Shown: positions 15,276 to 60,916 of the stretch, piece after piece
Position numbering within the stretch: position 1 is the stretch's first letter
Layout: each line of letters opens with the position of its first letter
Assembly (NCBI RefSeq): GCF_902459465.1
Contig: NC_047067.1
Location: 4,092,001 to 4,156,000, forward strand
Length of the DNA: 64,000 nt
Source: Asterias rubens
Lineage: Eukaryota
Direction: 5' to 3'
Notes under the pieces: model-generated
Database searches by the model: none
The model's input: the letters and a program-made list of their open reading frames with translations, nothing else
Told to the model about the DNA's origin: nothing
Translations under genes and position numbers: made by a program

Positions 15276-15489
15276 GCTTGTCACCCATTAGGGAATGCAT
15301 GCCTATCAATGCCACCCTGTTGGGAATGCATGCCCTATACTCCCACCGTGAAGGGGGATGCATGTATGCCTATGTGTACTATTGCCGGCCTGTCCGGGAT
15401 GCCACCCTGTTGGGAATGCGGGCCTCAGTATTGTCACCGCGTTCGGAATGAAAGCCTAATGTTGCCCCCCCCCCCCGTTGAAAATGCAG

Positions 15490-15950
15490 GCCTAAAGTTG
15501 CCACCCTGTTGGTCAGGCCTAAAGTTGCCACCCTGTTGGTCAGGCCTAAAGTTGCCACCCTGTTGGTCAGGCTTAAAGTTGCCACCCTGTTGGTTAAGGC
15601 CTAAAGTTGCCACCCTGTTGGTCAGGCCTAAAGTTGCCACCCTGTTGGTCAGGCCTAAAGTTGCCACCCTGTTGGTCAGGCCTAAAGTTGCCACCCTGTT
15701 GGTCAGGCCTAAAGTTGCCACCCTGTTGGTTAAGGCCTAAAGTTGCCACCCTGTTGGTCAGGCCTAAAGTTGCCACCCTGTTGGTCAGGCCTAAAGTTGC
15801 CACCATGTTGGTCAGGCCTAAAGTTGCCACCATGTTGGTGAGGCCTAAAGTTGCCACCCTGTTGGTGAGGCCTGTTGCCACCATGTTGGCCAGGCCTATA
15901 GTTGCCACCGTGTTGGTTAAGGCCTAAAGTTGCCACCCTGTTGGAAATGC
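15490..15950. repeat. 27-bp tandem minisatellite, about 17 copies, with degenerate flanks (about 14860-16020)
   Basis: Unit CCTAAAGTTGCCACCCTGTTGGTCAGG; explains the repetitive ORFs on both strands. Confidence 0.95.
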
Positions 15951-16094
15951 ATACCTAACAATGCGACCCTATTGTGGAATGCATGCCTAATAATGCCACC
16001 CTATTTTAGAATGCAGGATTTATAATGTCAACCTGATGTATATTTTCCTAGTTTGAGAGACCACAGGAGTCTTGAAACTTCTGAAGGAGCCAAA

Positions 16095-16149
16095 ATGGGG
16101 CGATTCTGCTTTGATATCGCCTTCTGCAGTCTGGTATGTTTGTTCCTCG
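16095..16149 (+). CDS. Start exon, signal peptide
   Basis: caaaATG; [18 protein letters not shown] then G|gtaagt; acceptor ttttcctag at 16051. Confidence 0.8.
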
Positions 16150-19100
16150 GTAAGTGAGTTTATTTTGCACAAAGGTTAGCCATTTAATTTTGTTGGCTTT
16201 TTCAAAAAGAAAGATGGGCTGAAAATATTACCGTTTACCAACTTGTTTTGGGCAACAAAAATACCTGTTTCAACATGTCATTTCACAACAAACTTATGTG
16301 AAAGCTATGTGTTGACATAAAGCCCCTGGCTATAGAATAAAATTGACAATTTAAAACTCGTCTAAGATCAGAGGTTTACATAAAACTTACACGAGTCTAA
16401 TGATGATAGTAGCAATCATACTTTCTCATGACCCAGATAGCCGATCGATTTTAAATTTTTACAAGTGTTAACATTGTTAGCATTTATTTTTTATTTTTAT
16501 AATTATCCTTTAAAGTGTAACCTTGTTGTGTTTGAAGACATGCAACTTACCGTTACCCCTTTTGGTTAATTACAATTTAATTAAAACGCTTCGACTCCAC
16601 ACACACCATACATTTATTTCGTGATTGCATTCAATAGTCATGAATTCCTTTGAAATACAGCTATCTACAGCGTCGACGGTTACTCTATTTCTAGAGGAGG
16701 TTCTGGGTCTCAGGAAAGTACAAAAGGAAGCGGGTGAGTGAGAAAAACTTGTTCGGCTTATAACTGTGTGTTTCGTCAAGAACATTGTACAAATCTATGC
16801 AGTCCGGTAAGAATGGGCAGATTAAAGGCAGTGGACACTATTGGTAATTGTCAAAGACTAGTCTTCACAGTTGGTGTATCTCAACATATGCATAAAATAA
16901 AAAACCTGTGAAAATTTGGGCTCAATCGGTCATCGAAGTTGCGAGATAATAATGAAACAAAAACAACCCTTGCAACACGAAGTTGTGTGCGTTTAGATGG
17001 TTGATTTCGAGACCTCAAGTTCTAAACTTGAGGTCTCGAAATCAAATTCGTGGAAAATTACTTCTTTCTCGAAAACTATGGCACTTCAGAGGGAGCCGTT
17101 TCTCACAATGTTTTATATCATTAACCTCTCCCCATTACTCGTCACCAAGAAAGGTTTTATGCCAATAATTATTTTGAGAAATTACCAATAGTGTCCACCG
17201 CCTTTAAACGCCCGGTCACACATGCCTCGATAACGACAATAAAAACATGTTAAAATCGCATGCCCTCGATTGGTTGAATAAGCGTGGGCGTATTCTGCTG
17301 GAGCAATTCAAGCAATACAATGCGTACTCTTTGCTTCGTTATCGTTTTCGTTATCGCGGAAGTGTGCCTCGGCCTTTAAAATCAGAATAAAGCGGACCTC
17401 GTTCACGTTAGCCTTTCGTCAAGGCGCTTCGTCACTGGTCTTTTTTTGTGAGTGACATTCGGGGTTGTGCGTGACATCTGGGTGCCGCGTGAGCCCTGAC
17501 TAAAGGCTACGTTCACCTCGACCACGGTTGTGTTTTTTTCTTTTTCGAGTGAACGTCAACATCATAGTTTTGGGGTCCTCGACTTCTTCAGACAACGTTG
17601 GTGACGAATTGACGCATGCGCAAAGCCTCAGTATGACGTAGTCATGTAACTGTTGACGTACGTGGATGCCACATCTGGAGCTGCCTGTCTGCACGACGGG
17701 TTGTATTAGGCGCTAAGTGTAAATTTATTATTTAACGAAATTATTTACAAAGTTCATAATGTACCCCTAACCACTTTACATTTTAGTGGCATTTTGTTAT
17801 TAGGGGTTGCTGTATTGTGCAATTTCCAAAATGTGTCGGATACTTCAAACTGTCAATAATCACATATACATGTTCGATCGAAACTGCTCCCTCTGTCTCT
17901 GAATGAATTCATTACACCTTACCAGCAAAATTGCACACTCCGCTCCAGCTCAGATACAAGGATTCTCACAACACCACAAACCACAATGTCTTCGTCAAAA
18001 GTTGTTTAATGGAGCTGCTCAAAACCTTTGGAACAATCTGAAAACACTTTGCCTTTCGGTAGTTGATAATCGATATTCGGTTTTTTTCTTTCTTTTTTCT
18101 GCAGGGGTTCTTCAACAGGAGGCTCTCATGAACAACACGGTAAAAAACTTACCCTTAAGTTCATATCATATACTACTAGACCTATCCGTGTTGTTTTGCT
18201 TATGCTTAATTAAGTACGGTTACCAAAGGCTAGTTTTCAATGCCCAATGAGTCTATGGCTGAAAATTAAAATTAAATTCGGTTCTGTAGCTCTAGAGATA
18301 TGGTCCAACTTCCCGTAGTAATTGTCAACATGGGGTCAAGTTTACCACAGCTAAGCTCAAATGCCAATGAACCTATAACTGAAAATAAGTTTGAAAATCG
18401 GATGTGTACTTTCTTAGATATGGTCCCACTTCCGGTTGACCCGGAAGTAAAGGTCAGCATGGGTTCACTGTTATTCAATGCTTATGCCCAAGGAGTCTAT
18501 AACTGGGTATAGATTTAATACAAATCGGTGGTGTAGTTCTTGAGAAGGTCCCACTTCCGGCTGAACTGGAAGTAAAGGTCAACACGAGGTCACTGTTTTG
18601 AACGTTTTAGTGATACAAACCAGATTTGGGAGTGTTTTAGAGAGTTTACATTTGATTTGTTGTCGTTTGTAGTCCAGTTTTTATCTCGATGATTGTTCAT
18701 CCAAAATGTTACCAAAACATTCAATTTATTCATTACACTTTGATAGATGCTTACACATTGGAAGCCGGAACATTCTGAAATTATTCATGGCATGTTCCTA
18801 ACATTTGCCTAAAGGCCCACTGAATCTAACATGTTGTATTTGTTTGTTCTTTAACCATGTAATTTTGCAATCAGTATTATAAAAAACAATCAGTATTATC
18901 AACACCAGGTCAAGTGTTTTAAAAAGTCTTTGTGCTGGTAGTGACATTCAACCAAAAGAAATACTGCTAGTTTTCACACAGGTTAACTCACCTTTAAAAA
19001 AGAATAAACAGGCACTGTTCTTGAAATTTTGAATAAACACTCTCTTTGTGCTATTCTTTTGAGGGTATCTTTTTGTATTTCGTATTTTTTTTCAGCACCA

Positions 19101-22100
19101 AGTCCTCAGCCTTGTGATAGTCATCCATGCCAACATGGCGGTATATGCCATAATCATGGAACAACATATGAGTGTGTTTGCCCCAGTGGCTGCTCAGGAG
19201 CACGCTGTGAACTAGGTAAGTATGTACGTTTCAAACCGTCTTATAGACGATGTGACCTCTGACGTCACTCGAAAACCATAACATGATTCGCGTGCATACC
19301 GCTGTTTCGGCAGCCAGCTAGAAAAATTATGCACTCTTACCATGACTACGCGTCTTTTTGCCCGGCGAAACATGACGTATACAATGTTTTGTCAACAGAG
19401 GGCAGTTTGAATGTAAACATAGGTCACATCGTCTATATACACCCAAGATAAACATGCCAATAAACAATGGATTACTATTCTCTGACAACTATTCTCCCAA
19501 AGTTATTAACTAGTAGCAGCAATATATGAACTAGATTTAATAATTGACTTACAATGCGAACACAACTATCCTGCTGGGTGTTCAATTAAAGGCGCAGTAA
19601 AAACAAAACGAAAGCAAAAAATAAACAACAGACACAATAAATGGAGTCCTTGAAAACCTGTGACAAAAGATAAGTTTTAAGAAGAGATTTGAATTGTGTG
19701 ATACAAAGACAAGATCTAAGATCAGGTGGTAGAGAGTTCCAGATGCGTGGCGCAGCTGAGACTTGGGTTCAATGATGCATGGCACTTGATCGAAGATTCC
19801 TTGATGGGAGGGATCAGTGAAGTTGTTTCAATATGGGGGTGAAAGAACATGATTTTCTAGACAGTGTCACGAAGCGGTGTTTTGGAGGCATTAAAAACGG
19901 GATAGTTGGTCGCAAGGGCGACTGTAGAGAAGAGCAATGACTTTGTCAAGAAAAGAGGTAATTAGCAAAATGCACGAATGACCTTTTCAGTGGTACTCTT
20001 GTCCAAGTACTTGCGAATCTTACCAATATTCCCCCATGTGATATGATGACAGACGAATTTTGATGTTGATATGTAGTTGAAGTGTCAAAAATAACCCTTC
20101 AAGTTCCGTGTGAGACCTATTCGAGCGTCACCGATGGAAACGTATGGCACGGAAACATTTGTAAACTGTGGACGTTATTATTTCTCAACAATGAGTGTGG
20201 ACTCGTAGAATTACTCGTGCATAAATATTTGTAGTTATAACACACCTCTTGCTTTTTCTGTATTCTGGTTGGCTGAAACACGGTCACGTGGGATGAACTA
20301 ATATAGGCTAGTGATCGCGCGCGCGTGTTTTGCGGGAATAGTACCAGAGCGGGCACTAGTCTTTGCAAATAGTGCCCGCGGTAACAGCGCCCTCTCTTGA
20401 CTTGAACCGTGAACAAACTACAAAATTCCTTTATCTGTTCTTATTTGACATTTTAAGACCGACCTGTGTTATAAAACACATATTGACTGGCATAATTCGG
20501 TAACTAGTGTACGTCTATTCCCCCTCGGGCCTGTGAGTGACCAGAAGAGGGGCCTATTTCCCTCGGCCTCGGGAAATAGGTCGCTCTTCTGGTCACTCAA
20601 AGACCCTCGTGGGAATAGACGTATACTAGTAACCTCGTTGCCAGTCAATATGTGTATGCTAAACTACTAGTCATCATTCATTTGATGTACAGTCTTCTAT
20701 AAAGAGAAAACTTATGTGGACCAAGAGACCATTATTAAAGCTCTCAGTATTGCAGCTGCCGCACATTCAAATACCATCTCGATCAAGAGTAGATTCGTAA
20801 TGAATCTACAGTTAAGGGTAGAATCATATACGAATCTACACCTTCATGTCATGATGTTTTCTCTATAATTTTAGAAAATAAACTGTTGGACACCATCAAA
20901 GGAGCTACAGGAAGCGGCAGCAGTCAAACTTACCCTGACCATGTCAACTCGTAAGTTTCAATCATGCGACCACGAGTATTGTAGATCTTGTAGATCTTTA
21001 TAATGTGCTGAAACCAACACATTGATTCATTGTGCATTGTTACCGATATCGTGACAAAAACACGTATGCAGTAGGCTTTTTCCGTTTTAGTACAAAATTA
21101 ATAAAATGGTAATTGAAGGCCCTATCTGTTTTTTCAGCATGCCTAAAGTTTAAGTTTTATTTAAATAATGAACTTGGATAGAAAGGTTTATAAAAAGCCT
21201 GCATGTAAACTATTTTTGCAGGTCATTTTTCCAAGTTTTTTTTTTCCAATTAAACTTTTGCTCAATTTACATCTCATAACATACGTAAATTGTCATTTTC
21301 AATTGTCGTTATAGCTTTCTCTTTCAGAAGGTATAAGTAATTTATGAATGGAGAACGATTAATCCGAAAATCTATATTTCTTAACAGAAAATCAAATTCT
21401 GGAAGCAATGAAGTGCCAGGTAAGTGAATCAATACGATCTATAGGGGCTTTATGTTACCTATAATGTTGCTCATCTCAAGCCTTTAGTTCTTGACAAGAC
21501 TGCATCAGTGATCGTAACTTTCTGATAACAACAGCAAACTTCTTTTCAAACTTGGCACCTGTATCCTCTTCTCATTTTATGTTTTACCATTCCAAGTTTC
21601 TCTGGACGTCAGTATTGAACTGTTCTGTTTGCATTTAAGCTTTAGGTGATACACAAAACCCAACCAAGTCCGCAAGTAAAGAGAGCCGCCCCTCTTCCTC
21701 TGGCAGCAGCAGTCATACAGACCCTGACCACGTCAACTCGTAAGTTTCATTCACGCGACCACAAATTTGGTAGAACTATATTGACTTTCCAAAATGAGCC
21801 GGAACTTAAAAGCAAAAATGTTGCTTTATTGTGCATTGTGACGGATAACGTGAACAATCTATGCAGAAGTCTTCTTCCTTTTTACAGAGTTTAGCGACTA
21901 AGAAAAACAAAAAGTAAGTTTAACTTTTATTTAAATAACGAATTGGGATAGAAAAGCTTAAGAAAAGCCTGTTTGTAAACCATTTACATCTCATTATATA
22001 TTATATACGTATAAAACTGTCATTTTCGTTTGCTGTTGTAGCTTTGTCTTTCACAAGGTAAAGGTAAATTAACGTATGGTAGATGGTTAATAAAAAAAAA

Positions 22101-25100
22101 TCTATGTTTCTTAACAGAAAACCAAGTTCTGAAAGCAATGAAGTGCCAGGTAAGTGAATCATCACGATCTCTATAGGGGCCTTATCTTTCCTATAATGTT
22201 GCTCATCTCAAGCCTTTAGTTCTTGAAATCACTGCATCGGTGATCGTTATTTTCTGATAACAACAGCAAACTTCTTTTCAAACTTGGCACCGGTATCCTC
22301 TTCTTAGTAGTATCTTTGTTTAGATTTTTGATCATGTATTTAAATTGTGTTTTTTTCAGCACCTAATCCTCAGCCTTGCGATAGTCATCCATGCCAACAT
22401 GGCGGTGTATGCCAAAATAAAGGACAATTATTTGAGTGTGTTTGCCCCAGTGGCTGCTCAGGAAGACGCTGTGAAAATGGTAAGCATGTAAATATCAAAC
22501 CGTCTTATATACACCTAAGTTTAAGATGTGAGTGATGTGAATTGATGGTTTTAGATATTGATTGATATTTCTGTTTAATTTTGTCTTACATTAACTACAA
22601 TGTATAGGACCTGTTCAAGACCCATGTGCGAATAACCCTTGTGAGCATGGGGGAGCATGTTCACCTTATGGATCCAGCTACCGATGCAGTTGCCCGTCAG
22701 CGTACATGGGTTCTAGATGCCAACTAGGTATCAATGAGTTTTACTTGTTCGAGCGTAGTTACTTCTGAACTGTGGAACACCAACTCTATGTTCTGTTTCG
22801 CCTTTGTCAATCAGTTATCAAGACCAAAAACACTTGAGCAGATCATTACGTACTGGTGTAACATGCGACTGTTACAATTACTGCTTCTTTTCATCTCCAC
22901 TGACACAATTTGAGCACAATAAACCCGAGAGGTATTGCTCTTAAAGTTATTATTTAATCACTAACTCTCGTTAACTTTGATCTGATTACCGATGACATTC
23001 CAATGCAATTTATCACCCAATTCGGCATGTGTTAATACTAAGTATTACCTGAAAGGATTTAATAAGCACTATTAATTTTAATCCACGATTCTCTGAACGC
23101 CAATATTTAACTAATCTGTTCTTATAAAATCTTTAGGCAAAACACAAAACCCAACCAAATCTGCAAGTAAAGAAAGCGGACATTCTTCCCATGGCAGCAG
23201 CAGTCATGAAGACCCTGACCATGTCAAACCGTAAGTTTCATTCATGCGACCACAAATATGGTAGATCTTTGTTTTTTCCCCCAACAAATAATAAGTAAAA
23301 AAACATGAAGGCCCTGTCTGTTTTTCTCAGCAAACCTTAAAGTTTAACATTTTTCTTAAATAACGAACTTGGATAGAACAGGTTAAGTAAACCCTGCATG
23401 TTAACTATTTTTGTAGGACGTTTTTCTAAGTAATAGGTTTTTTTCTCGAGCTGCTTTTGTTCCAATCACATCTCATTACATACGTCATATGTCATTTTCA
23501 TTTGTTTTCTCTTTCAAAAGGTATAAGTAACTAACCAATGGTAGATGATTAATCCGAAAATCTATATTTCTTAACAGAAAATCAAATTCTGGAAGCAATG
23601 AAGTGCCAGGTAAGTGAATCAATACGATCTATAGGGGCTTTATCTTACCTATAATGTTGCTCATCTCAAGCCTCTTTAAATCACTGCATCAGTTATCGTT
23701 ATTTTCTGATAACAACGGCCAGTTGCTTTTCAAACTTGGCACCTGTATCCTCTTCTTAGTAGAATTGCTCAACCAAGCTGAGTTATACCTTGAAAACTTT
23801 AAGAAATTTTATGTTTTACCATTCCAAGTTTCTCTGGACGTCATTATTGATCTATTCTGTTTGCACTTAAGCCTTAGGAGATACACAAAACCCAACCAAG
23901 TCTGCGAGTAAAGAGAACCGCCCCTCTTCCCCTGGCAGCAGCAGTCATACAGACCCTGATCACGTCAACTCGTAAGTTTCATTCACGCGACCACAAATTT
24001 GGTAGAACATTATTGTTTTTCCAAAATGTGCTGAAACTTAAAGGCAAAAATGTTGCCTTGGTGTGCATTGTGACGGATAACGTGAACAATCTGTGCAGAA
24101 GTCTTGTTCCATTTTAGTGAGTTTATCGAAAGAAAAAACAATTCAAATATTTAGGACCTATCTGTTTTTTTCTCAGCAGACCTTTGAGAGTAAGTTTTAT
24201 TTAAATAACGAGTTGGGATAAAAAGCTTAAGAAAAGCCTGCATGTAACTTAGTTGTGTTGGTCGTTTGTCTTTTTTTTAGCTACTTTTATTCAATTTACA
24301 TCTCATTACATACGTAAACTGTCATTTTCCTTTTGTATTATAGCTTTGTCTTTCAAAAGGTATAAGTAATTAACGATTGGTAGATGATCAATCCGTAAAT
24401 CTATGTTTCTTAACAGAAAATCAGGTGATGAAAGCAATGAAGTGCCAGGTAAGTGAATCAATACAATCCATAGGGGCTTTATCTAGTTGCTCATCTCAAG
24501 CCTTTAGTTCTTGAAATCACTGCATCAGTGATCGTAATTATCTGATAACAACAGCAAACTTCTTTTCAAACTTGGCACCGGTATCCTCTTCTTAGTAGAA
24601 TCTTAGTTTAGATTATTGCCCATGTATTTAAATTGTGTTATTTTTTCAGCACCTAATCCCCAGCCTTGCGATAGTCATCCATGCCAACATGGCGGTGTAT
24701 GCCAAAATAAAGGACAATTATTTGAGTGTGTTTGCCCCAGTGGCTGCTCAGGAAGACGCTGTGAAAATGGTAAGCATGTAAATATCAAACCGTCTTATAT
24801 ACACCTAAGTTTAAGATGTGAGTGATGTGAATTGATGGTTTTAGATATTGATTGATATTTCTGTTTAATTTTGTCTTACATTAACTACAATGTATAGGAC
24901 CTGTTCAAGACCCATGTGCGAATAACCCTTGCGAGCATGGGGGAGCATGTTCACCTTATGGATCCAGCTACCGATGCAGTTGTCCGTCAGCGTACATGGG
25001 TTCTAGATGCCAATTAGGTATTATTGATTTTTACTTGTTCGAGCGTAGTTACTTCTGAACTGTGGAATACCAACTCTATGTTTTGTTTCGCCGTTGTCAA

Positions 25101-36777: not shown

Positions 36778-36810
<33 letters not shown>

Positions 36811-51800: not shown

Positions 51801-54800
51801 ATGCTTTGAATTTGCATTTTTGAAATTTTTGCATTTTTTTTCTTTTTCTCCCCAATAATAAAAAGGTCCAGATGTAAATGGTAAGTTTTTTCATTTCGTC
51901 AAAACATTCTATGTAAATGATGAAAACGATTCTTTTTTTGTATTTATCCTATCGATTTGTTAAATTGTATTGATTACTCCATCCTAGAAAACTATGGTTT
52001 GGCCCCTTATTGGTGTTTGTTTCGTCTCTTGTTGACAAATCTAAATATCGCAAACGGCAAACAATCCAACGTACCAGACACAAGCTCTGTTGTTGTCAGC
52101 CGCAGAATGTGGGTTCGAATCCTGGTCATGACTTTTGTGCCCTTGATCAAGGCACTTCACTTTACTCGCTTTGTAAAATGTTCGAAGGTTGTGCATTCTG
52201 CTCTACCAGCCAGGCTCCTAGTGGATGATACCCAAGCCTACATCCTTACATACTGTGAAGGGGGTAACTGTATATCAACCCATGTTGTTATTGGCAACAG
52301 AATGTGGGTTTGAATCCTGGTCATGACTCTTGTGTCCTTGATCAAGGCATTTCACTTTGTAAAGTGTTCGTCGAAGGTTGTGTATTCTGCTCTATCAGCC
52401 AGGCTCCTAGTGGTTATATCTAAGCCTACATCCTTGGAGACTGTGTATGGGTAACTGTATTCCAGCCCCTTGAGTAGGTGACAAAATGCCCTTTCAGTTG
52501 ATTTGTGTTGACAGCCAAAATCAGTTACTATTGACCGCGCTAAATTAACACACGAGCTGCGAAAATTCGTAATAAATTATGGAAAACACTATACAGCAGA
52601 ACAATAACAATCAATTAAAATATTAATATTAAAGACATTTTTGTTTTTAGATGTGTTTGTAAGAGAGCCACGGTTCCGAAGCAAACCTGCGCAGAAATGA
52701 GCAACGTTTCACTTTTATTGATTCCCACGTACAGATCACGTGATACTAGAATCAACCAATGGCGAGATGGAAGATGTTGATATCCCACTCCTGGCTTTCT
52801 ACACACATTCGTCCTATTTGCTGCGGTTCAGTGTCATGTGTTACGACAGTGTTCGCATCGGATTCAAATCTGCAGTTTATTCGCATGTCTACTACTACGT
52901 TTGTGAGTACAACAAATAATATCAGTCTCGAGTATGCTACGCTTTGTGCGTAATGTAAAGAATGATACGTTTAATAATTATGTAATTTTTCATTAAAAGC
53001 ATTTCTCCATTTAATTATGGAGACCTCTTAGCACAAAAGGCATTAGGGAACTTTTGGGATGATTGGTGGCAGCAGTCTTATCATGTAAAATCCATTGACT
53101 TCGTTAATGTGCGCATGCTCAGAACTACGTAAGCAATAGCAAAATACCTGGTAAGTCTGCTGCCACCTTGCGTTCCAAAGGCTTCTATTGACTCGAGCGC
53201 AGAATTACTTTAACGCATTGATGATGTAGCTTTGCAGATTTTAACAGAACAAAAACAGGGCTCTTTTTTTCCTGACTGGATAATTACCAATCCGAGTCTT
53301 AGGTTACAATATTGTGTCTGTTCATTTTGTGAGCAGAAAACTAGCTGGTTCATTTCGTGCTAGTTACTTAGGTCAAGTCGGTATTCATTTTATTAAAAAC
53401 ATTTTGCTATTCTCAAGTAGTATGAGAATCAAGTCCCACGCAAACACTAGTCACCGCTTCTGTGATTGCCAGTATCACAAAACTAGCAACACAATAATAA
53501 GACATTGAGAACATTATTCAAAAAAGTTAACCTTTTTATTTATGTTTTTTTAATTTCAGATTTGGGTAAAACGTCAGCTCGGATTGAACACTGTGAGAAC
53601 ACATGTCAAAGTGTATCTGAGGTTGACATTAGCGGTCAACTGAGTGCGACAGCCTTTGCTGATTACTACATCCGATTTACATCAACTGGGTCTCTGATAG
53701 TTGGTATCCTTGATGCATCATTTACTGAGCTGATGTCATTCAACGGTGAACCACCAACATGTCCTTTGCTCGTGTTTGTCAGCTCTGGGGACGGTTATAT
53801 GGCAACCTGGAAGATATATGAAGCCATCACCGAGCAAGGTTTGCCCATCATTTGTTTTTTATACTGATAAAAACCATTCATAAACTAACTTGGTAGGCCT
53901 ATTTATTTATTACGATCCTGTTTAAACTTTATTCATTGGTTTTTGTTTACGTGTTATCCATCTAAAAAGGGGCGAATAATTGCTTATTAATTATCATTTG
54001 TCATTATAATTAATTGTTCTTGGTAGAACTAATATATCGCTAGGGGATCTTTCAAATAAGTATTTCATAGGTATAGGTATGGGTGCATTATTATATTTAA
54101 ATTAATAAACAGACACAAAATGTCCCAGTGCGCTTCAAACTAACGGGACAATTTTTACAGTTTGTTTGTTTTCTATGGCGAGTTTGAGGGAAAAATAACT
54201 GGCTTCATAATAAAACATGTCATTCGGGTTTCTGTTTATAACGAAAATTGAGTTTGGGGGTCGAACAAAGATTTGACTTGAGTGGGATTCGAACCAAGGA
54301 CCTCCGGATTAACGTGTCGGCGCTCTTCCAACTGAGCTATCTAGCCCTCTATTGGCGGTCTCCCTATTATGTCAAAATCTTTGTTCGGGGTGCCAATTCT
54401 TTGTCCAAGCCCCCAAATCATATACAAATTTACTCAGTCGGTTTCACTTGTGGTTTTTATTGATATAAAGAAAGTTGTTAACCATATCATGCTGTCATCT
54501 GTTTATCCACAGTTAATACAATTACCTGGCGAACAGTCAACGTGAACCTGAGATCCGATCAGTACACTTACCTGGGTGAAAGCTTCCAGGTATACGACCG
54601 ACAATTACGACTTGGTCTAGCGATAGATTCAGAGGTGACGGTATTGCTATCCAAGGGATATGATGACGCCAATAATTATGAGATTGGTAGGTTCTAAACG
54701 CTATATTGTAACTTCTAAACAAAATGTTATAAGTATTGACAATTGTATTGATTGTGGAAGTGTCGTGGCGGAGCGGAAAAGCACCGAATTTCAAACTCCG

Positions 54801-57800
54801 GTGTTTCTTATCAGCAGAGTGTGGGTTCGAATACCCAGCCGTGACACTTGTGTCCTTAAGCAAGACACTTTACCATTGCTTCGTCCTTCGGATGGGATGT
54901 AAAGCCGTTGGTCCCACGTGTTGTGTAACTCATGTAAAAGAACCCAGTACAAAAAGCGAAGGGGTTTGCCCCGGTGTTCCTGGCTGTGGCTGATGTATGC
55001 GCAGTAGCACCTTGTACACCCTTGTAAAGGTGCTATACATAATTGGGTCTCAGAATTCATCTCTGCAATAACCTATCTTTCTGAAAGTTGGTATATACTC
55101 AGCGCCTTGTGTACATTGTGTGGTAGATACGTGCGCTATGTAAGACTTCGATATTATTATAATTATATTTACAGACCTAACGTGCAAAATCTGTGATTTA
55201 AAAGAATTGTTTTAATGTGGTTACTTATACATTTAAAGGGTCATGATACCTTTTGTAGATAAAGTTTTTGGCCATGACATGAATCCGTACTCACTGTGAA
55301 TGAAGATATGTAATATGATTTACATAAACAAGTTTCAGCTTCATTAATCGTCAAGTTTTGGAGACAAAAGTGAAAATTACAGAGTGATGTTTTCAGGAGA
55401 GTAGCGTAAATACTAGTTTACTAGTACTGGTAAATACGATATGCATGCTAAAAAAATCGTATCTTGGGATTAAAGTTATTTTCGTGACATTAATTTACTA
55501 GATTCTCAAAAACTACAGCATCTTTAGCAAGTAATATTTTGAGGGAAGATTGCTACCATCGTTATCTTCAACAAGTTGAATGTTGTGTTTTGTGTCCTAC
55601 AAAAAATACCTTAACCCATTAAATGTCATTGTTTGTGTAGATTTTGTACTAAATTTTGCTTTGTTTTGTTGCTGTTCAAAAACAGTCTTCCGAGCCGCAG
55701 GAAACACAAAACTGCAAATCAAGAAAAACGGTGAAGTTGTGAAAGAAGGGGACTGCGTGGTTAATAGCTCCAGCCTCGATGACTTTGAAGACTTCTGGAT
55801 AAGCTTCGCTAAGAGTACCATCTCAGTTGGTCGAGTTGGTCTGGACATGCAACCTGCATTTGTCTCGTGGTCGGACACCTCGTCACTTGAGGTCTCACTT
55901 GCAGCCTTCAAGGGAGCGTCATCTTCATATCTTGTGTACTACAAATTCGAATATCAAACTGGTAAGTGGCCATGAGCTAACATCCTGTATTCTATATTCG
56001 TAAATACCTCAGACAGTTTCGCTATTCCTAATGGTAGAGAGCGCGTCACGTGGGTGTGTATAAACCTTTGTTTATGACCAGTAAAAAGCTGGAGGGGTGT
56101 TGTGTTGAAAGAAATCATTGAACAATTATAATGTTTGCATTTATTTTATTTTGTTACAAATTGTTTTGGATGTTTTTGACCGAAAAGGTATTGATGAATG
56201 GGAATCAAAGTGTGTTGAATCGGTTTTCAACTAATGGTTTAAACCCGCCGAGGCCTGGTTCTTGATAATTTACCTCGACTTCGTCTTGGTAAAATTATCA
56301 AAAACCAGGCCTCGATGGGATTAAACCACTAGTTGAAAACCTCTTCACCATACATTGATTCCCTTGTTAAAGGCACTGGACTCTATTAGTAAATAATCAA
56401 AATAATTGTTAGCAGATATCAATTACCTGGTACTGAGCAACGGAGAGAGTTGATAGTGTTGTGAGACACGGCTCCCTCTGAAGTAACGTAGTTTTTGAGA
56501 AAAAGGCAATTGCTCACTCAATGACATTTAAATACTTAAAGCCTGACAGCTTTTTAAGACATCTGAAAGCACACAAAATGTGTACAGTATGTTTTTCTCT
56601 ATATTTTCTTGCAATTTGGATGTTATTTCTCTCATTATTCTTGCAACTGGGATGGCTAATTGAGTCAAATTTTTACAGATGTGTTATCTTATGCAATGTT
56701 GGGATACACCAATTTTGAGGATACTGCCCTTTGACAATTACCAAGAGTGTTTAGTGCCTTTAATGCTTACCTTAAAGATTTGGGAAGTAAGTGTTAGCGC
56801 CCACTTTTGTGGCTGCGAGTAAACTTCGTTTGGCTCTTTCTGTCTCTTATTCTTCAACGTATGAATTCATTCCTGTTTTTTGTGTGGATTTGTTTTCTGA
56901 GTTCCTTAGGAACTAAAATTCATGGCAGCGTTTGAGCATTCACTGCACATTGGTTTTAGTTGCCGGTGTCCCATGGAAAGCTGTCCGTCGGAGATTCTGT
57001 CGTGGGCTGAAGGAGTATGATTCAAAAGAGGGCGCTATCAGAAGACGTTTGTGCACAGTTTGCCGTATGGGGGGGGGGGACACGACCGGCATTCTGTGAA
57101 AAAAAAGGCTACAGAGAAGAGCACAACACCTAGTCTCAAGCTTACCCCTGTGACTGCATTGATTCCTTTTCCATACTTGATTTCTAACATCTTTTTTTAT
57201 TTGACGATCATTTATATTTAGCAAGGGGTATATTCTGGACCTTCGATTGCGACATGGCGTACCCACTACCATTTGAGAAAATTAAAATGCCACAAACAGC
57301 GCTGGAGATTGGTTTGACCGCAGACTGTGATGCTCATTTCAGTATTGCTGCTACAGACGAAGACAGCCCAGATGCTCCGATGTACGAAGTTGGTATGTGA
57401 AGTTTAAATACATTAGCCCACTGTCAATGTTACCGATGTACTTTTTTCGTTAAACTATTAATTTTATTATTATATATATTTTGTTTAAGTGGAAGAGGAT
57501 CTGTGTTGCAATTTGATTGCAATGTATGTTTCAATACTTTTGTTTTGTTTAGTTTTGTGTTAATTCTATCAGGATTGGGGGGAAGGGGGTACGATGTGGC
57601 CCTGCCATATTTTTGTCAGTATACTTTTAAGGCTGCGTCTGATCAATACCAATTTAATCAGAAATTGCCCCAACGGCATGACCCTAGTGGTATAATAAAG
57701 TCATTATTGATCATGTCAAAGCAAGCAAGAATTTGTAGCACACAATGTGACAAAATAATGTATCATGTTTAATTTGGCTTCATCGATCAATGTTACTGTG

Positions 57801-59335
57801 TATTGAGTACAGACGATGTGACTCGAAAACCATAACATGATTCGCGCGCATACTGCCGGGCAAAACCTTTGTGTTTTGACAGCCAGCTAGAAAGCGTACC
57901 ATGACTACGAGTCTTTTTGCCCGGCGAAACATGACGTATACATAGGTCACATCGTCTATTGCATGTAAATAATTGGGTTGGTGACTTAATAAAGTACACT
58001 ATACTGATTGTTATTTCGTTATCTTATTACAGTGATTGGAGCTGAGGATAACACCAAATGCCTCATTCGCAAATGCAAAGAATGTGAGTGTATGGCCGAA
58101 GTAGACTGCCCACATATCCTAGATAAGAACAAGCAGGTCGACTTCACCTTCGAGTTTGAGTTTGGTCACTTGAAACTCTTCAAGGGTAAGGGGGCTTCCA
58201 AGTCGGCCCAACCCATCATGTCATGCGAAGATCCAGAACCATTGATTGGTCTGGAGTACTTGGCGTTAAGTACTGGATTCGAAAGCGACGGAGAATCACA
58301 CTGGAGGACATATAATGTGTAGTAAGTTGACAAATGTATGTTTATTATTATCACTTGATTAACATGGTCTTCAACATAATGCACTGGACACGTTTGATAG
58401 TATTGTCAAAGACCAGTATTCCCACTAGGTGTATGCATAAAACAATCAAATATGTAGAGATTTTGGCTCAATATTGGGCATCGAAAGTTGTGTGCTTTCA
58501 GATGCATTAATAAAGCTTCAGGCCTGAAGTCTCTCTTTGGTTAAAATATACTGAGTGATAAATTACCTCTTTCTCCAAAACTTTGTTTCTTTATGTTATC
58601 AGCAGCTATCCATTGCTCGGGTTTCAATTAGGGATTATGCTAACATATAATTTGAAAAAATACAATCAAATGTGTGAAGTGCCTTTAAAGGCAGTGGACA
58701 CTATTGGCAATTAATCAAAAATAATTATTAGCATAAAACCTTACTTGGTAACGAGGAATGGGGGAAGAGGTTGATAGTATAAAACATTGTGAGAAACGGC
58801 TCACTCATACCTCAGAATTAGATTTTGAGGTATCGGAATCAAGCATTTGAAAGCACACAACTTCATGTGACAAGGTGTTTTTTCTTCCATTGTTATCTCG
58901 CAACTTCTACGACCAATATTGAGCTCACATTTTCACAGGTTTGTAATTGTTAGCATATGTTGAGATATACCAAGTGAGAAGACTGGTCTTTGACAACTAC
59001 CAATAGATATTGTCGAGTGCCTTTAATGTCAATAGAGTGTAGTTACTCAAAATCAGTGAAACTAGGTGGGACACCGAGCGTCACTATTAAACATCATTAT
59101 GGCCGACAACGACCATAAAGTCTGCAAGGGGTTTGTCGGACACTATACTAATGACCAGTAAAACCAATGGGTCCGACATAAAGTTTCATATCATTTGTAA
59201 GACTTGATGGTTTGGACAAGTTTGTTTGACACACGTATCAATTATTTATTTGTTCTTTCATAGCTAACCCTGAATATATGTTTAAATTCAGTTTTGTAAT
59301 CAAGGAATAATGTTTTAATCTTCTTTGATTTCAGA
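16095..59335 (+). CDS. Gene B: giant secreted modular protein, SP-(EGF / Ser-His linker)n-EGF6-FAMeT x3; 76 coding exons, about 2229 aa (about 2189 aa without the LINE-disrupted exon)
   Basis: Exons: 16095-16149, 16661-16733, 18105-18139, EGF 19096, 22 linker exon pairs and 12 EGF exons in 20875-45134, 46182-46298, 46517-46562, 46896-46921, 47280-47393, 47975-48097, 49517-49636, 49853-49969, 50737-50856, 51866-51880, 52735-52902, 53560-53838, 54513-54686, 55686-55961, 57222-57392, 58033-58321, 59335. All junctions are GT-AG and phase-compatible. Summed length 6690 nt is divisible by 3 with no internal stop, using the native 120-nt length for exon 36662. Confidence 0.85.
16661..16733 (+). CDS. 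Exon 2 (phase 1-2): end of signal peptide plus Gly/Ser linker
   Basis: tacag|...|gtgagt; [25 protein letters not shown], plausible cleavage after VDG. Confidence 0.75.
16822..17207. mobile_element. Kolobok-like MITE family A
   Basis: TTAA|AGGCAGTGGACACTATTGGTAATT...AATTACCAATAGTGTCCACCGCCT|TTAA. Confidence 0.9.
17209..17378. mobile_element. Small TIR element abutting the Kolobok-like MITE
   Basis: GCCCGGTCACACATGCCTCGATAACGA / TCGTTATCGCGGAAGTGTGCCTCGGCC imperfect inverted ends. Confidence 0.5.
18105..18139 (+). CDS. Exon 3 (35 nt, phase 2-1): [11 protein letters not shown]
   Basis: Long pyrimidine tract + ctgcag acceptor; restores phase 1 for the first EGF exon; weak donor gtaaaa. Confidence 0.7.
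18280..18610. repeat. Three degenerate repeats of about 125 bp
   Basis: GGTCC(C/A)ACTTCC...GTCA.CA.G.GGT(C/T)CA recurs near 18300, 18420, 18545. Confidence 0.55.
19096..19215 (+). CDS. EGF exon type A (7 Cys), first copy
   Basis: [40 protein letters not shown]; 120 nt, phase 1-1. Confidence 0.92.
   Translation, partial: HQVLSLVIVIHANMAVYAIIMEQHMSVFAPVAAQEHAVN
19242..19437. mobile_element. MITE with TA/TATA target duplication
   Basis: TATAGACGATGTGACCT...AGGTCACATCGTCTATA; empty site CCGTCTTATATACAC in sister introns; second copy 57811-57958. Confidence 0.85.
19590..19760 (-). mobile_element. 3' fragment of a second L2-clade LINE
   Basis: Minus strand reads [38 protein letters not shown], homologous to the C-terminus of the 36.8-39.4 kb LINE. 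Confidence 0.7.
20476..20655. mobile_element. Long hairpin element (about 180 bp)
   Basis: ACACATATTGACTGGCA...TGCCAGTCAATATGTGT with arms paired to the centre. Confidence 0.65.
20875..22149 (+). CDS. Linker cluster 1 (2 exon pairs)
   Basis: 20875-20950 + 21388-21419; 21646-21739 + 22118-22149; [78 protein letters not shown]. Confidence 0.85.
22360..22727 (+). CDS. EGF pair A+B (22360-22479, 22608-22727)
   Basis: A: [40 protein letters not shown]; B: [40 protein letters not shown]. Confidence 0.92.
23137..24448 (+). CDS. Linker cluster 2 (2 pairs)
   Basis: 23137-23230 + 23578-23609; 23878-23971 + 24417-24448. Confidence 0.85.
24650..25017 (+). CDS. EGF pair A+B (24650-24769, 24898-25017)
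   Basis: Near-identical to the 22360 pair; 120-nt phase 1-1 exons. Confidence 0.92.
25427..27680 (+). CDS. Linker cluster 3 (3 pairs)
   Basis: 25427-25520 + 25868-25899; 26168-26261 + 26719-26750; 27105-27198 + 27649-27680. Confidence 0.85.
27882..28249 (+). CDS. EGF pair A+B (27882-28001, 28130-28249)
   Basis: As above. Confidence 0.92.
28659..30910 (+). CDS. Linker cluster 4 (3 pairs)
   Basis: 28659-28752 + 29101-29132; 29401-29494 + 29950-29981; 30336-30429 + 30879-30910. Confidence 0.85.
31112..31479 (+). CDS. EGF pair A+B (31112-31231, 31360-31479)
   Basis: As above. Confidence 0.92.
31889..36462 (+). CDS. Linker cluster 5 (6 pairs)
   Basis: 31889-31982 + 32331-32362; 32631-32724 + 33184-33215; 33570-33675 (106 nt) + 33897-33928; 34074-34167 + 34627-34658; 35023-35116 + 35494-35525; 35880-35973 + 36431-36462. 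Confidence 0.85.
36662..36780 (+). pseudogene. EGF type A exon separated from its splice donor by a LINE insertion
   Basis: Intact acceptor and 119 of 120 nt; the final G and GTAAGC donor are displaced to 39434-39440. Read-through gives CEN(N)9ENL-stop (TAA 36817). Carries a private CCC>TCC (P>S) change. Confidence 0.85.
36781..39428 (-). mobile_element. 5'-truncated L2-clade (CR1 group) non-LTR retrotransposon: endonuclease C-terminus + reverse transcriptase, inactive
   Basis: GGDFN and SDH endonuclease motifs; RT motifs [25 protein letters not shown]; L2-type [13 protein letters not shown]; (ATT)n tail; in-frame TAG at 39192-39194; 1-nt frameshift near 37570; candidate TSD AAAAT. Confidence 0.95.
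39550..39669 (+). CDS. EGF exon type B
   Basis: [40 protein letters not shown] with intact AG/GT. Confidence 0.9.
   Translation, partial: DLFKTHVRITLASMGEHVHLMDPATDAVARQRTWVLDAN
40079..42716 (+). CDS. Linker cluster 6 (4 pairs)
   Basis: 40079-40172 + 40522-40553; 40702-40807 (106 nt) + 41029-41060; 41208-41301 + 41748-41779; 42134-42227 + 42685-42716. Confidence 0.85.
42916..43282 (+). CDS. EGF pair A+B (42916-43035, 43163-43282)
   Basis: [12 protein letters not shown]... and [12 protein letters not shown]... Confidence 0.92.
43694..45134 (+). CDS. Linker cluster 7 (2 pairs; last partner is a unique 65-nt exon)
   Basis: 43694-43787 + 44083-44114; 44386-44479 + 45070-45134 ([22 protein letters not shown], phase 2-1). 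Confidence 0.8.
46182..46298 (+). CDS. Basic Lys/Arg/Tyr-rich EGF exon
   Basis: [39 protein letters not shown]; 117 nt, phase 1-1. Confidence 0.88.
46517..46921 (+). CDS. Short linker exon pair (46517-46562 phase 1-2; 46896-46921 phase 2-1)
   Basis: [16 protein letters not shown] + SSSSAEIE; only the pair preserves frame. Confidence 0.65.
47280..47393 (+). CDS. EGF exon
   Basis: [38 protein letters not shown]. Confidence 0.9.
47975..48097 (+). CDS. EGF exon
   Basis: [41 protein letters not shown]. Confidence 0.9.
48659..48697 (-). ncRNA. Minimal type I hammerhead ribozyme, Penelope-like element type
   Basis: Minus strand GCCT-CTGAAGA-A-GGTCC(GGATT)GGATC-GAA-AGCT-A-AGGC: core CUGANGA/GAAA, helix II 5 bp, palindromic AGCT helix III, CUA cleavage triplet, helix I GCCT/AGGC. 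Confidence 0.65.
49517..49636 (+). CDS. EGF exon
   Basis: [40 protein letters not shown]. Confidence 0.9.
49853..49969 (+). CDS. EGF exon
   Basis: [39 protein letters not shown]. Confidence 0.9.
   Translation, partial: SNLVPVRTAHAPTVEPAFRTVKISSVNAQNNSRVDDAK
50030..50683. mobile_element. Two back-to-back Kolobok-like MITEs sharing a TTAA (50305-50308)
   Basis: Decayed family B copy ending GTGTCCAGTGCATTTAA, then family A copy 50305-50683 ending GTGTCCACTGCCTTTAA. Confidence 0.75.
50737..50856 (+). CDS. EGF exon (last)
   Basis: [40 protein letters not shown]. Confidence 0.9.
51866..51880 (+). CDS. 15-nt micro-exon (SPDVN), gene B
   Basis: aaaag|GTCCAGATGTAAATG|gtaagt; paralogue of 709-723. 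Confidence 0.75.
52085..52480 (+). mobile_element. Two tandem head-less tRNA-derived SINE bodies
   Basis: Orthologous to 961-1780. Confidence 0.6.
52735..53838 (+). CDS. Gene B FAMeT-like domain 1 (52735-52902, 53560-53838)
   Basis: Same sizes as and near-identical protein to gene A domain 1 (for example AFCTH>AFYTH). Confidence 0.78.
54263..54392 (-). mobile_element. tRNA-derived repeat (SINE head)
   Basis: Minus strand GGGCTAGATAGCTCAGTTGGAAGAGCG...GGTTCGAATCCC with A and B boxes but a poorly paired acceptor stem; decayed relatives near 45250-45310 and 45470-45545. Confidence 0.65.
54513..55961 (+). CDS. Gene B FAMeT-like domain 2 (54513-54686, 55686-55961)
   Basis: ...DANNYEI + [16 protein letters not shown]...[20 protein letters not shown]... 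Confidence 0.82.
54754..55165 (+). mobile_element. Full-length tRNA-derived SINE with an L2-type 3' tail
   Basis: A box GTGGCGGAGCGG, B box GGTTCGAATAC, core GACACTTGTGTCCTTAAGCAAGACAC, 3' AGCGC...GCGCT stem and TATTAT tail; absent from the gene A intron. Confidence 0.8.
56197..56365. mobile_element. Long hairpin element
   Basis: GGGAATCAA...TTTTCAACTAATGGTTTAA...GAGGCCTGGTT / AACCAGGCCTC...TTAAACCACTAGTTGAAAA...TTGATTCCC. Confidence 0.6.
56367..56763. mobile_element. Kolobok-like MITE family B
   Basis: TTAA|AGGCACTGGAC...GTGTTTAGTGCCT|TTAA; 5' remnant at the same intron position in gene A (about 4513-4635). Confidence 0.8.
57222..58321 (+). CDS. Gene B FAMeT-like domain 3 (57222-57392, 58033-58321)
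   Basis: ...[23 protein letters not shown] + [15 protein letters not shown]...[30 protein letters not shown]. Confidence 0.85.
57811..57958. mobile_element. Second copy of the AGACGATGTGAC MITE
   Basis: Same internal sequence as 19242-19437. Confidence 0.75.
58378..59026. mobile_element. Two adjacent Kolobok-like MITEs sharing TTAA at 58685-58688
   Basis: ...GAAGTGCCT|TTAA|AGGCAGTGGACAC...GAGTGCCT|TTAA. Confidence 0.75.
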
Positions 59336-60430: not shown

Positions 60431-60916
60431 TAAACCGTTGCTAACACATAATCTTTGACGTGTTTGATATGAGTTTAAAGGATACTGATAACTTACGTTT
60501 AAAATGCATAAATTATTAGGCGTTATTAATAACAAGTTAAAAAAAACATCTATTTAGCAATATGTGCAGTAATTAAAACATATGGTATTTGGGAAATTAT
60601 TTTAATATAATAAATCCTGCATCAAATCTAACTGAATCTCGTTTGACAACCAATTGTTGAATCATTGATCTCACTATAAGGAATGTTATTATGGTAACCA
60701 ACTACATGGATGTAGATTTAGTGTAGACGTGTAAATCAATGTAAACGATCATTGAAGATAACAGTGAAATGAGAGTCGTCTGGCTGTCTGGTCACGTTGA
60801 TGAACGCGAAAGCAATAAACAAAACAACCTATAGCAACAGAATCACTGGAAATGATTCTTACTTGCGTATCGTGTTGTCTGGACTGAACTAAGGGTCGGT
60901 TCAAATTGGAGACGCA

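What the first reader, a model, noticed from the sequence alone, without database searches (positions are those of the whole stretch)
16095..59335. Hidden 76-exon gene for a giant secreted EGF-linker-FAMeT protein (candidate adhesive/mucus/matrix protein)
Seen: a continuous, stop-free spliced frame of about 2,230 codons from a signal peptide, through 19 EGF exons (one disrupted) and 22 Ser/His-rich linkers, to three FAMeT-like domains. The ORF track shows only scraps of it. Knowledge: from my recollection of the literature, EGF and FAMeT-like domains recur in sea star footprint (Sfp) adhesive proteins, and tandem EGFs form mussel foot protein 2; this needs checking. Inference: this beads-on-a-string secreted architecture, with no transmembrane segment, suits a cross-linkable extracellular polymer, and I do not recognise it as a named gene.
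Basis: partly seen in the sequence, partly recalled or inferred. Interest (0 to 1): 0.92.

Follow-up and report, generated by a model that had tools for sequence, protein, structure and literature searches.

The report
Giant secreted EGF-linker-FAMeT protein gene
This is a real, transcribed gene of about 70 exons for a secreted protein of about 2,100 residues, made of EGF beads, serine/histidine-rich spacers and lectin-like 'FAMeT' domains; it most likely belongs to the sea-star footprint (adhesive) protein class Sfp4a/4b, which is already published, and is not a new kind.

Summary
From an ATG at 16095 I rebuilt a stop-free spliced frame of 70 exons, all AG/GT, giving 2,129 codons with the stop at 58320-58322. 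It has a hydrophobic N-terminus, 19 EGF exons (one destroyed by a LINE), 22 linker exons each followed by a 32-nt mini-exon, a 15-nt micro-exon, and six exons forming three FAMeT-type domains. Two of those domains are significant; the first is degenerate. RNA contigs of the same species (0.3% mismatch) and of a relative (about 4%) join the last EGF exon, through the micro-exon, to the FAMeT exons exactly at the predicted junctions. The 5' array (16-50 kb) has no direct transcript evidence here.

Algrain et al. 2022 (PMC9382459) describe Asterias rubens footprint proteins Sfp3, Sfp4a and Sfp4b with this EGF + FAMeT make-up. Sfp4a and Sfp4b lie at one locus whose full ORF was unsolved. So this is a known kind, though the full gene model may be new. 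I could not fetch those sequences, so orthology and tube-foot expression are untested.

A proxy model of the FAMeT fold is a galectin-like beta-sandwich, not a methyltransferase fold. The scan had already noted the LINE and the homogenised array in this window.

The parts
16095..16149 (+). Exon 1: ATG plus an 18-residue hydrophobic N-terminus (probable signal peptide), GTAAGT donor, phase 1
   Evidence: the only Kyte-Doolittle window above 1.4 in the whole protein
19096..19215 (+). First EGF-A exon (7 Cys, C-x-S-x-P-C motif)
   Evidence: Pfam EGF 33.9 bits
20875..20950 (+). Divergent first linker exon (76 nt, phase 1 to 2)
21388..44479 (+). Higher-order tandem array. It holds 6 more EGF-A exons (one broken), 6 EGF-B exons, 21 linker exons of 94 or 106 nt and 21 mini-exons of 32 nt. 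Units of about 3.23 kb are 95-99.4% identical, introns included. Exon coordinates are in the full report.
36662..36780 (+). EGF-A exon disrupted 2-3 nt before its donor; presumably skipped (phase 1-1, so the frame is kept)
36781..39432 (-). 5'-truncated LINE with an RVT_1 ORF and a (TAA)n tail, inserted into the EGF-A exon
   Evidence: (RVT_1 E 2.2e-32)
45070..45134 (+). Ser/Gly-rich exon (phase 2 to 1) that closes the array frame
46182..46298 (+). Unique EGF exon 1
   Evidence: 30.8 bits
47280..47393 (+). Unique EGF exon 2 (C-x4-T-C motif)
47975..48097 (+). Unique EGF exon 3
49517..49636 (+). Unique EGF exon 4
49853..49969 (+). Unique EGF exon 5
50737..50856 (+). Unique EGF exon 6, joined in RNA contigs to the micro-exon
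51866..51880 (+). 15-nt micro-exon (AG ... GTAAGT), phase 1-1
   Evidence: (12 extra letters in contigs); the paralogous copy at 709-723 is
52735..52902 (+). FAMeT-like domain 1, N-half exon (degenerate)
53560..53838 (+). FAMeT-like domain 1, C-half exon
54513..54686 (+). FAMeT domain 2, N-half exon
55686..55961 (+). FAMeT domain 2, C-half exon
   Evidence: (PF12248 28.6 bits)
57222..57392 (+). FAMeT domain 3, N-half exon
58033..58322 (+). FAMeT domain 3, C-half exon with the stop codon at 58320-58322
   Evidence: (41.3 bits)

Best explanation
The region holds one gene on the + strand, 16095-58322. It encodes a secreted modular protein of about 224 kDa with no membrane anchor. After the signal peptide come EGF modules alternating with Ser/Pro/Gly/His-rich, probably disordered spacers. 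These are encoded by a recently amplified, homogenised exon array. Then come six unique EGF modules, a micro-exon, and a C-terminal triple of FAMeT-type beta-sandwich domains.

I read it as a member of the sea-star footprint protein class with EGF + FAMeT architecture, closest in make-up to Asterias rubens Sfp4a/4b. In that reading it is released by tube-foot adhesive gland cells and works as a cohesive, cross-linkable thread.

Shown: gene structure, domains, splicing of the 3' third, purifying selection, and the galectin-like fold of the domain family.

Inferred:
- secretion;
- the stiff disulfide-bonded EGF beads are spaced by flexible linkers that are O-glycosylated and/or phosphorylated (56 S-x-E motifs);
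- intermolecular bonding occurs through one surplus cysteine per EGF-A module and through histidines;
- the lectin-like FAMeT tail docks onto glycans or partner footprint proteins.
For: Gene model: 70 AG/GT exons give 2,129 codons with no internal stop.

Domains: Pfam EGF scores on every EGF exon tested and PF12248 on the tail. The spliced exon pairs rebuild full-length FAMeT domains (i-E 1.9e-8 and 7e-21).

Transcripts: a 1,435-nt RNA contig of the same species (3 mismatches in 898 nt, depth 273) joins the exons in this order:
- 50856 to the micro-exon;
- the micro-exon to 52735-52902;
- then 53560-53838, 54513-54686 and 55686-55961.
Contigs of a relative about 4% diverged do the same.

Conservation: an adjacent paralogue keeps the micro-exon and all six FAMeT exons, with pN/pS 0.21. 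Another species keeps the two D3 exons with a shorter intron.

Protein properties: the only hydrophobic stretch is N-terminal. Composition is S 16.7%, C 6.1%, H 4.4%. EGF-A carries 7 Cys.

Fold: a proxy FAMeT domain modelled at pLDDT 96 matches galectins and GH16 (TM 0.55-0.60).

Literature: Sfp3/4a/4b have EGF + FAMeT, and Sfp4a and Sfp4b share one locus with an unsolved ORF. That locus lies in a cluster of FAMeT-bearing Sfp genes, expressed in AC1 gland cells, with high Cys and a Ser/Gly-rich part (PMC9382459).
Against: - No sequence comparison with Sfp3/4a/4b was possible, and the species of the window is unknown.
- The tissue of the RNA runs is hidden, so tube-foot expression is not shown.
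- There is no transcript evidence for exon 1 or the array (16-50 kb). Array copy number may be affected by assembly, because units are up to 99.4% identical.
- The paper calls the Sfp EGF domains calcium-dependent, but here no module has the cbEGF motif and EGF_CA never reaches its cut-off.
- FAMeT + EGF secreted proteins are common in deuterostomes, and this genome has several other FAMeT families. The architecture alone therefore does not prove adhesion.
- The fold evidence comes from a crinoid homologue about 33% identical, not from this protein.
- The signal peptide was judged by hydropathy only.
Confidence: 0.6

Rival explanations
1. It is a general extracellular matrix, cuticle/mucus or immune-type lectin protein, expressed broadly in epidermis or coelomocytes. 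It shares modules with footprint proteins but is not part of the adhesive.
For: PF12248 domains combine with EGF, CUB, C-type lectin, discoidin and fibrinogen modules in many deuterostome secreted proteins. Other secreted FAMeT-like gene families were noted elsewhere in this genome. The fold is lectin-like. No tissue information was obtained here.
Against: The specific combination matches Sfp4a/4b at one locus: signal peptide, EGF repeats, a Ser/Gly-rich part, and EGF + FAMeT. So does a neighbouring FAMeT paralogue, as in the A. rubens chromosome 6 Sfp cluster.
Confidence: 0.22
2. The locus makes two products rather than one giant protein. One would be a short 5' isoform (signal peptide, EGF and linkers, ending early). 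The other would be a separate 3' transcript (EGF + FAMeT). The full-length chain would then be rare or absent.
For: In A. rubens, Sfp4b was reported as a complete 334-residue ORF and Sfp4a as a separate 769-residue fragment, with several predicted splice variants. Retention of any intron after a linker or mini-exon stops the frame within 1-2 codons. I have no reads across 16-50 kb.
Against: Phases match across all 70 exons with no need for extra exons. No ATG/signal exon precedes the unique EGF part. The 961-nt contig of the relative extends 355 nt upstream of the last EGF exon. Short-read assemblers break in 99%-identical repeats, which would explain the fragments.
Confidence: 0.1
3. It is a skeletal (stereom) or other biomineral matrix phosphoprotein.
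For: FAMeT domains occur in mollusc shell-matrix proteins (PMC9382459; PMC6003135). The linkers are acidic and Ser-rich, with 56 S-x-E motifs.
Against: There is no evidence of expression in skeletogenic tissue, and the closest published architecture is adhesive.
Confidence: 0.05
4. It is a decaying gene: the LINE hit and the repeat turnover mean it no longer makes a functional protein.
For: One EGF exon is destroyed by a LINE. FAMeT domain 1 is degenerate.
Against: The other 70 exons are intact. The lost exon is phase-symmetric. Spliced RNA is present at depth 273. pN/pS against the paralogue is 0.21.
Confidence: 0.03

Closest known systems
Asterias rubens sea star footprint proteins Sfp4a / Sfp4b (GenBank OP067639, OP067640; Algrain et al. 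2022, PMC9382459)
   Same: Sfp4b has a signal peptide, repeated EGF and Ser/Gly-rich sequence. Sfp4a has EGF plus FAMeT and no start. Both map to one locus, have high Cys, and the locus sits in a cluster of FAMeT-bearing genes. The paper reports repeats and splice variants that prevented a full ORF. This window offers a one-gene reading of such a locus.
   Different: Sequence identity was not tested and the species is unknown. The paper calls the EGF domains calcium-dependent, whereas here none has the cbEGF motif. The reported lengths (334 and 769 residues) are fragments compared with 2,129 here.
A. rubens Sfp3 (OP067638, 1,184 residues)
   Same: Secreted, repeated EGF plus FAMeT, expressed in AC1 gland cells.
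   Different: Sfp3 also carries WAP and antistasin domains. None was seen here.
Mussel foot protein 2 and flatworm Mlig-ap1 (tandem-EGF adhesive proteins)
   Same: A string of EGF modules in a secreted adhesive or cohesive protein.
   Different: They have no FAMeT tail. Here Tyr is only 2.7%, so a DOPA chemistry like that of Mfp-2 is unlikely. Here the EGF modules are separated by long spacers.
Arthropod farnesoic acid O-methyltransferase (FAMeT, PF12248 + PF11901 proteins of about 280-450 residues)
   Same: Shares the PF12248 domain.
   Different: Those proteins are short and pair PF12248 with PF11901. This protein is secreted, has EGF modules and lacks PF11901. The domain fold is a galectin-like beta-sandwich with no nucleotide-binding fold, so enzyme function is not implied.
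Galectins / concanavalin-A-like lectin and GH16 glucanase fold
   Same: The best structural matches of the FAMeT domain model are galectins and GH16 (TM 0.55-0.60, Foldseek E about 1e-5).
   Different: Sequence identity is only about 10% and galectin sugar-binding residues were not examined. This is a fold resemblance only.

Membership tests
Sea star footprint proteins of the EGF + FAMeT class (Sfp3/Sfp4a/Sfp4b) | N-terminal signal peptide, no membrane anchor | tested here: inconclusive
   The N-terminus is 18 hydrophobic residues after M-G-R. There is no other hydrophobic window and no hydrophobic C-terminus. No signal-peptide predictor was available.
Sea star footprint proteins of the EGF + FAMeT class (Sfp3/Sfp4a/Sfp4b) | Repeated EGF-like domains | tested here: met
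   There are 19 EGF exons, 18 of them intact. Pfam EGF scores 27-35 bits against a cut-off of 21.5.
Sea star footprint proteins of the EGF + FAMeT class (Sfp3/Sfp4a/Sfp4b) | FAMeT (PF12248) domain(s) | tested here: met
   Pfam scores 28.6 and 41.3 bits on single exons. Spliced D2 and D3 reach i-E 1.9e-8 and 7e-21. D1 is weak.
Sea star footprint proteins of the EGF + FAMeT class (Sfp3/Sfp4a/Sfp4b) | High cysteine content; Ser/Gly-rich part (Sfp4b) | tested here: met
   Cys is 6.1% overall. The array part has S 21.4%, P 11.8% and G 9.3%.
Sea star footprint proteins of the EGF + FAMeT class (Sfp3/Sfp4a/Sfp4b) | Calcium-binding type of EGF, as described in the paper | tested here: not met
   No [DN]-x-[DN]-[EQ]-C motif is present. 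EGF_CA scores at most 16.6 bits against a cut-off of 27.
Sea star footprint proteins of the EGF + FAMeT class (Sfp3/Sfp4a/Sfp4b) | Sequence orthology to OP067638-OP067640 | not testable with these tools
   Four protein searches returned no annotated asteroid full-length relative. The paper's supplements are not held.
Sea star footprint proteins of the EGF + FAMeT class (Sfp3/Sfp4a/Sfp4b) | Expression in tube-foot adhesive gland cells and presence in secreted footprints | not testable with these tools
   The RNA runs are coded with no tissue given. Only transcription and splicing are shown.
Farnesoic acid O-methyltransferase enzymes | Short PF12248 + PF11901 protein | tested here: not met
   Arthropod members pair PF12248 with PF11901 at about 440-550 residues. 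This protein has 2,129 residues, a secretory start and EGF modules, and no other Pfam family was seen on the tail exons.
Farnesoic acid O-methyltransferase enzymes | A fold able to bind the methyl donor | tested here: inconclusive
   The proxy domain model is an all-beta sandwich like galectins. It was modelled on a homologue, not on this protein.
Mussel Mfp-2-type DOPA adhesive | Tyr-rich EGF repeats for DOPA chemistry | tested here: not met
   Tyr is 2.7% of residues.

The most novel reading that the evidence does not exclude
The published fragments Sfp4a and Sfp4b would be the two ends of one protein of about 2,100-2,200 residues, encoded by a locus of this kind. Its middle would be a rapidly evolving, homogenised exon array whose copy number sets the length of a cohesive thread. 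The thread would be cross-linked through one surplus cysteine per EGF-A module, through histidine and phosphoserine-rich spacers, and through a lectin-like FAMeT triple that grips glycans of partner footprint proteins.
Probability: 0.35. Interest if true: 0.55.

Novelty: new member of a known kind. Interest (0 to 1): 0.45.

Why it matters
Sea-star temporary adhesion is a model for reversible wet glues. Several footprint proteins, among them Sfp4a, are still known only as fragments, because repeats defeat short-read assembly (PMC9382459). A complete exon-by-exon model of an EGF-spacer-FAMeT gene gives three things:
- a full-length candidate for mass-spectrometry searches and recombinant work;
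- specific chemical features to test, namely an unpaired Cys in each EGF-A, dense S-x-E sites and His-rich spacers;
- a reason to treat the 'FAMeT' domain as a lectin-like binding module and not as an enzyme.

It is also a clear example of a phase-compatible exon array evolving in concert and tolerating the loss of one exon to a LINE.

Tried and rejected
1. Full-length relatives. The exhaustive representative search with the last exon gave only short ORF fragments at 44-46% identity and non-asteroid FAMeT proteins at 34% or less. The three word-indexed searches also failed:
- A1, with a long amphioxus first row, was swamped by generic FAMeT proteins.
- A2, with window exons only, was limited to proteins of 93-131 residues.
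- A4, with a long divergent first row plus window exons, returned only relatives of that first row.
As a result, Sfp3/4a/4b sequences were never obtained.

2. Species and gene identity through the paper's antibody peptides for Sfp7/8, Sfp10 and the astacin-like Sfp: no match in any frame of the window.

3. The paper's supplements are not held. Later literature adds nothing on Sfp4.

4. I tested whether intron retention after some exon gives exactly the 334 residues of Sfp4b. It does not. A 769-residue 3' fragment would begin inside linker exon 43694-43787; that is compatible but not evidence.

5. The share of sampled words held by RNA runs for 16000-22800 is 0.11 in X1, close to the exon fraction. 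Dispersed repeats inflate it, so I do not count it as expression evidence.

6. A possible extra exon at 44768-44848 was left out. The frame does not need it and its sequence is unlike the linkers.

7. The EGF-like regex hit at 4698-4799 was rejected as chance.

Full report
What is there.

The window is AT-rich eukaryotic DNA with no gaps. The features below lie on the + strand.

- Exon 1. An ATG at 16095 opens a 55-nt exon. It encodes M-G-R followed by 15 mostly hydrophobic residues and ends at a GTAAGT donor in phase 1.
- EGF exons. From 19096 onward every EGF module is one phase 1-1 exon.
- Spacers. Each spacer is a pair of exons. A linker exon of 94 nt (sometimes 106 nt; the first, divergent one is 76 nt) runs from phase 1 to phase 2. 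A 32-nt mini-exon then returns the frame to phase 1.
- Exon 45070-45134. This 65-nt Ser/Gly exon plays the mini-exon's part after the last linker.
- Tail. Six unique EGF exons follow, then a 15-nt micro-exon, then six exons that pair up into three FAMeT-type domains. The stop is at 58320-58322.

Exon coordinates:
- Signal exon: 16095-16149.
- EGF-A: 19096-19215, 22360-22479, 24650-24769, 27882-28001, 31112-31231, 42916-43035, plus the broken 36662-36780.
- EGF-B: 22608-22727, 24898-25017, 28130-28249, 31360-31479, 39550-39669, 43163-43282.
- Linkers start at 20875, 21646, 23137, 23878, 25427, 26168, 27105, 28659, 29401, 30336, 31889, 32631, 33570, 34074, 35023, 35880, 40079, 40702, 41208, 42134, 43694 and 44386.
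- Mini-exons start at 21388, 22118, 23578, 24417, 25868, 26719, 27649, 29101, 29950, 30879, 32331, 33184, 33897, 34627, 35494, 36431, 40522, 41029, 41748, 42685 and 44083.
- Ser/Gly exon: 45070-45134.
- Unique EGF: 46182-46298, 47280-47393, 47975-48097, 49517-49636, 49853-49969, 50737-50856.
- Micro-exon: 51866-51880.
- FAMeT: 52735-52902, 53560-53838, 54513-54686, 55686-55961, 57222-57392, 58033-58322.

Is it more than chance?

Joined, the 70 exons give 6,390 nt and 2,129 codons. There is no internal stop, and every acceptor is AG and every donor GT. All EGF exons tested pass the Pfam EGF threshold. The tail exons hit PF12248.

I built a profile from 60 FAMeT domains of other animals and ran it on the spliced protein. 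Domains 2 and 3 were then recovered over nearly the full profile length across their exon junctions (i-E 1.9e-8 and 7e-21). That is an independent check of those two splices. Domain 1 has the same two-exon layout and length but is degenerate: no Pfam hit, 12 bits against an enlarged profile, and hhalign probability 75%.

They differ on total exons and codons: 70 or 71 against 76, and 2,129 against about 2,230.

Transcript evidence.

I laid four runs on 50600-56500.
- A 1,435-nt contig of run X1 has 3 mismatches in 898 aligned letters and depth 273. It joins 52734-52902, 53560-53836, 54511-54685 and 55685-55961 without gaps. Upstream it joins the EGF exon ending near 50858 through 12 extra letters.
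- Those letters, with the flanking bases, are a 15-nt sequence found once in the window, at 51866-51880. It lies between an AG and a GTAAGT.
- Contigs of organism B (X2 and X3, about 4% mismatch) show the same joints. One X2 contig extends 355 nt further 5' than the last EGF exon.
- X4 behaves like genomic DNA, with pieces running across exon borders.

The EGF-to-FAMeT link is therefore transcribed and conserved in a close relative.

Conservation.

The first 6.5 kb of the window hold the 3' end of a paralogue. It has a 15-nt micro-exon at 709-723 and six FAMeT exons at 2064-6530 (its stop follows at 6534-6536). These are 94-98% identical in nucleotides to this gene, while the introns align only in part at 70-86%. 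Over the six exon pairs pS is 0.128 and pN is 0.027, a ratio of 0.21. Both copies have thus been under purifying selection.

A Logan contig from another species (L002) carries the two domain-3 exons at 77% protein identity, with a 160-nt intron in place of 640 nt.

The array.

Units of about 3.23 kb each hold two EGF exons and three spacer pairs. They are 99.4%, 98.4% and 95.3% identical to the reference unit, introns included. Such identity means recent amplification or conversion. It also means the copy number in the assembly should be checked.

One EGF-A exon is interrupted after ...GAAAA, 2-3 nt before its donor. The insert is a minus-strand, 5'-truncated LINE with an RVT_1 ORF and a (TAA)n tail, and the exon's last bases and donor reappear at 39433-39440. 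All EGF exons are phase 1-1, so skipping this one keeps the frame.

Properties of the protein.

- Size and charge: about 224 kDa, pI 5.9.
- Composition: S 16.7%, P 9.8%, G 8.8%, C 6.1%, H 4.4%, Y 2.7%.
- Topology: the only hydrophobic window is the N-terminus, and the C-terminus is polar.
- EGF type: no EGF module has the calcium-binding motif.
- Extra cysteine: every EGF-A has seven cysteines. The extra one replaces the usual aromatic residue in the C5-C6 loop. By inference it is unpaired and available for intermolecular bonds.
- Sugar motifs: EGF-A also carries C-x-S-x-P-C, the motif known from Notch-type O-glucosylation. Three unique EGFs carry C-x4-T-C, the O-fucose motif. This is knowledge-based inference only.
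- Spacers: they hold 56 S-x-E motifs, the motif of the secretory-pathway kinase Fam20C (inference). They also have repeated His-Asp pairs.

The FAMeT domain.

No solved structure matches by sequence. An AlphaFold model of a crinoid domain about 33% identical to domain 3 was built on a 60-row alignment. It is an 11-strand beta-sandwich with pLDDT 96. Its best PDB matches are fungal and animal galectins and GH16 glucanases, with TM 0.55-0.60 and about 10% identity.

This is a proxy, not the protein itself. Even so, it argues that the domain is a binding module of the concanavalin-A-like kind and not a methyltransferase.

Comparison with what is known.

Algrain et al. 2022 (PMC9382459) list the A. 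rubens footprint proteins.
- Sfp3, Sfp4a and Sfp4b have repeated EGF domains and are expressed only in type-1 adhesive gland cells.
- Sfp1, Sfp3, Sfp4a and Sfp5 have FAMeT domains.
- Sfp4b (334 residues, signal peptide) is Ser/Gly-rich.
- Sfp4a (769 residues) lacks its start.
- Sfp4a and Sfp4b map to the same place on chromosome 6, where seven Sfp sequences cluster.
- For Sfp4a the correct ORF 'remained unsolved' because of repeats and predicted splice variants.
- The authors say FAMeT domains have an unknown role and may be specific to sea-star adhesives.

The gene here has the make-up expected if Sfp4b and Sfp4a were the 5' and 3' parts of one gene. It also sits next to a FAMeT paralogue. 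That is resemblance plus circumstantial fit, not a demonstrated orthology. I could not retrieve any Sfp sequence, the organism names are coded, and the tissues of the runs are hidden.

Verdict.

The gene is real and expressed at least in its 3' third. I class it as a new member of a known kind, or possibly the first full model of a known but unresolved locus.

My confidence that it is a footprint-type (Sfp4-like) protein is about 0.6. My confidence that it is a single functional secreted EGF-spacer-FAMeT gene is about 0.85-0.9.

Noticed in passing
window 1-6536 (+): This is the 3' end of a tandem paralogue. It has a micro-exon at 709-723 and six FAMeT exons spanning 2064-6530 (stop 6534-6536), 94-98% identical in nucleotides to this gene's tail. 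pN/pS is 0.21. Its 5' part lies outside the window.
   Followed up: partly
window 36781-39432 (-): A 5'-truncated LINE with an intact 532-residue RVT_1 ORF and a (TAA)n 3' tail, inserted 2-3 nt before the donor of an EGF-A exon. The short A-rich target appears duplicated.
   Followed up: partly
window 54274-54346 (-): An Rfam tRNA match (32.8 bits) that ARAGORN does not call. It lies in an intron stretch with very high contig depth in all runs, so it is probably a tRNA-derived SINE.
   Followed up: no
window 16983-17191 and 50432-50683 (+): Two copies of a dispersed repeat whose translations are alike. The second copy has contig depth in the hundreds of thousands in every run, and many contigs end at 50683.
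   Followed up: no
window 13484-14092, 15487-15944, 60916-61845, 8383-9118: Four tandem repeats: a 31-mer x 19.6 (99% matches), a 27-mer x 17 just upstream of exon 1, a 61-mer x 15.3, and a degenerate 13-mer x 56.
   Followed up: no
window 1066-1344 and 51957-52313 (+): A repeat with an internal duplication lies in the intron before FAMeT domain 1 in both paralogues. The gene duplication therefore covers at least 1.9 kb upstream of domain 1.
   Followed up: partly
L001 (ENA metagenome scaffold, 944 nt): A marine metagenome assembly holds a contig 99.2% identical to window 53228-54169. DNA of this sea star or a very close relative is thus present in an environmental sample.
   Followed up: no
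all EGF-A exons, e.g. window 24650-24769: There is a seventh cysteine in place of the conserved aromatic residue of the C5-C6 loop. It is kept in all seven EGF-A copies, including the divergent first one.
   Followed up: partly
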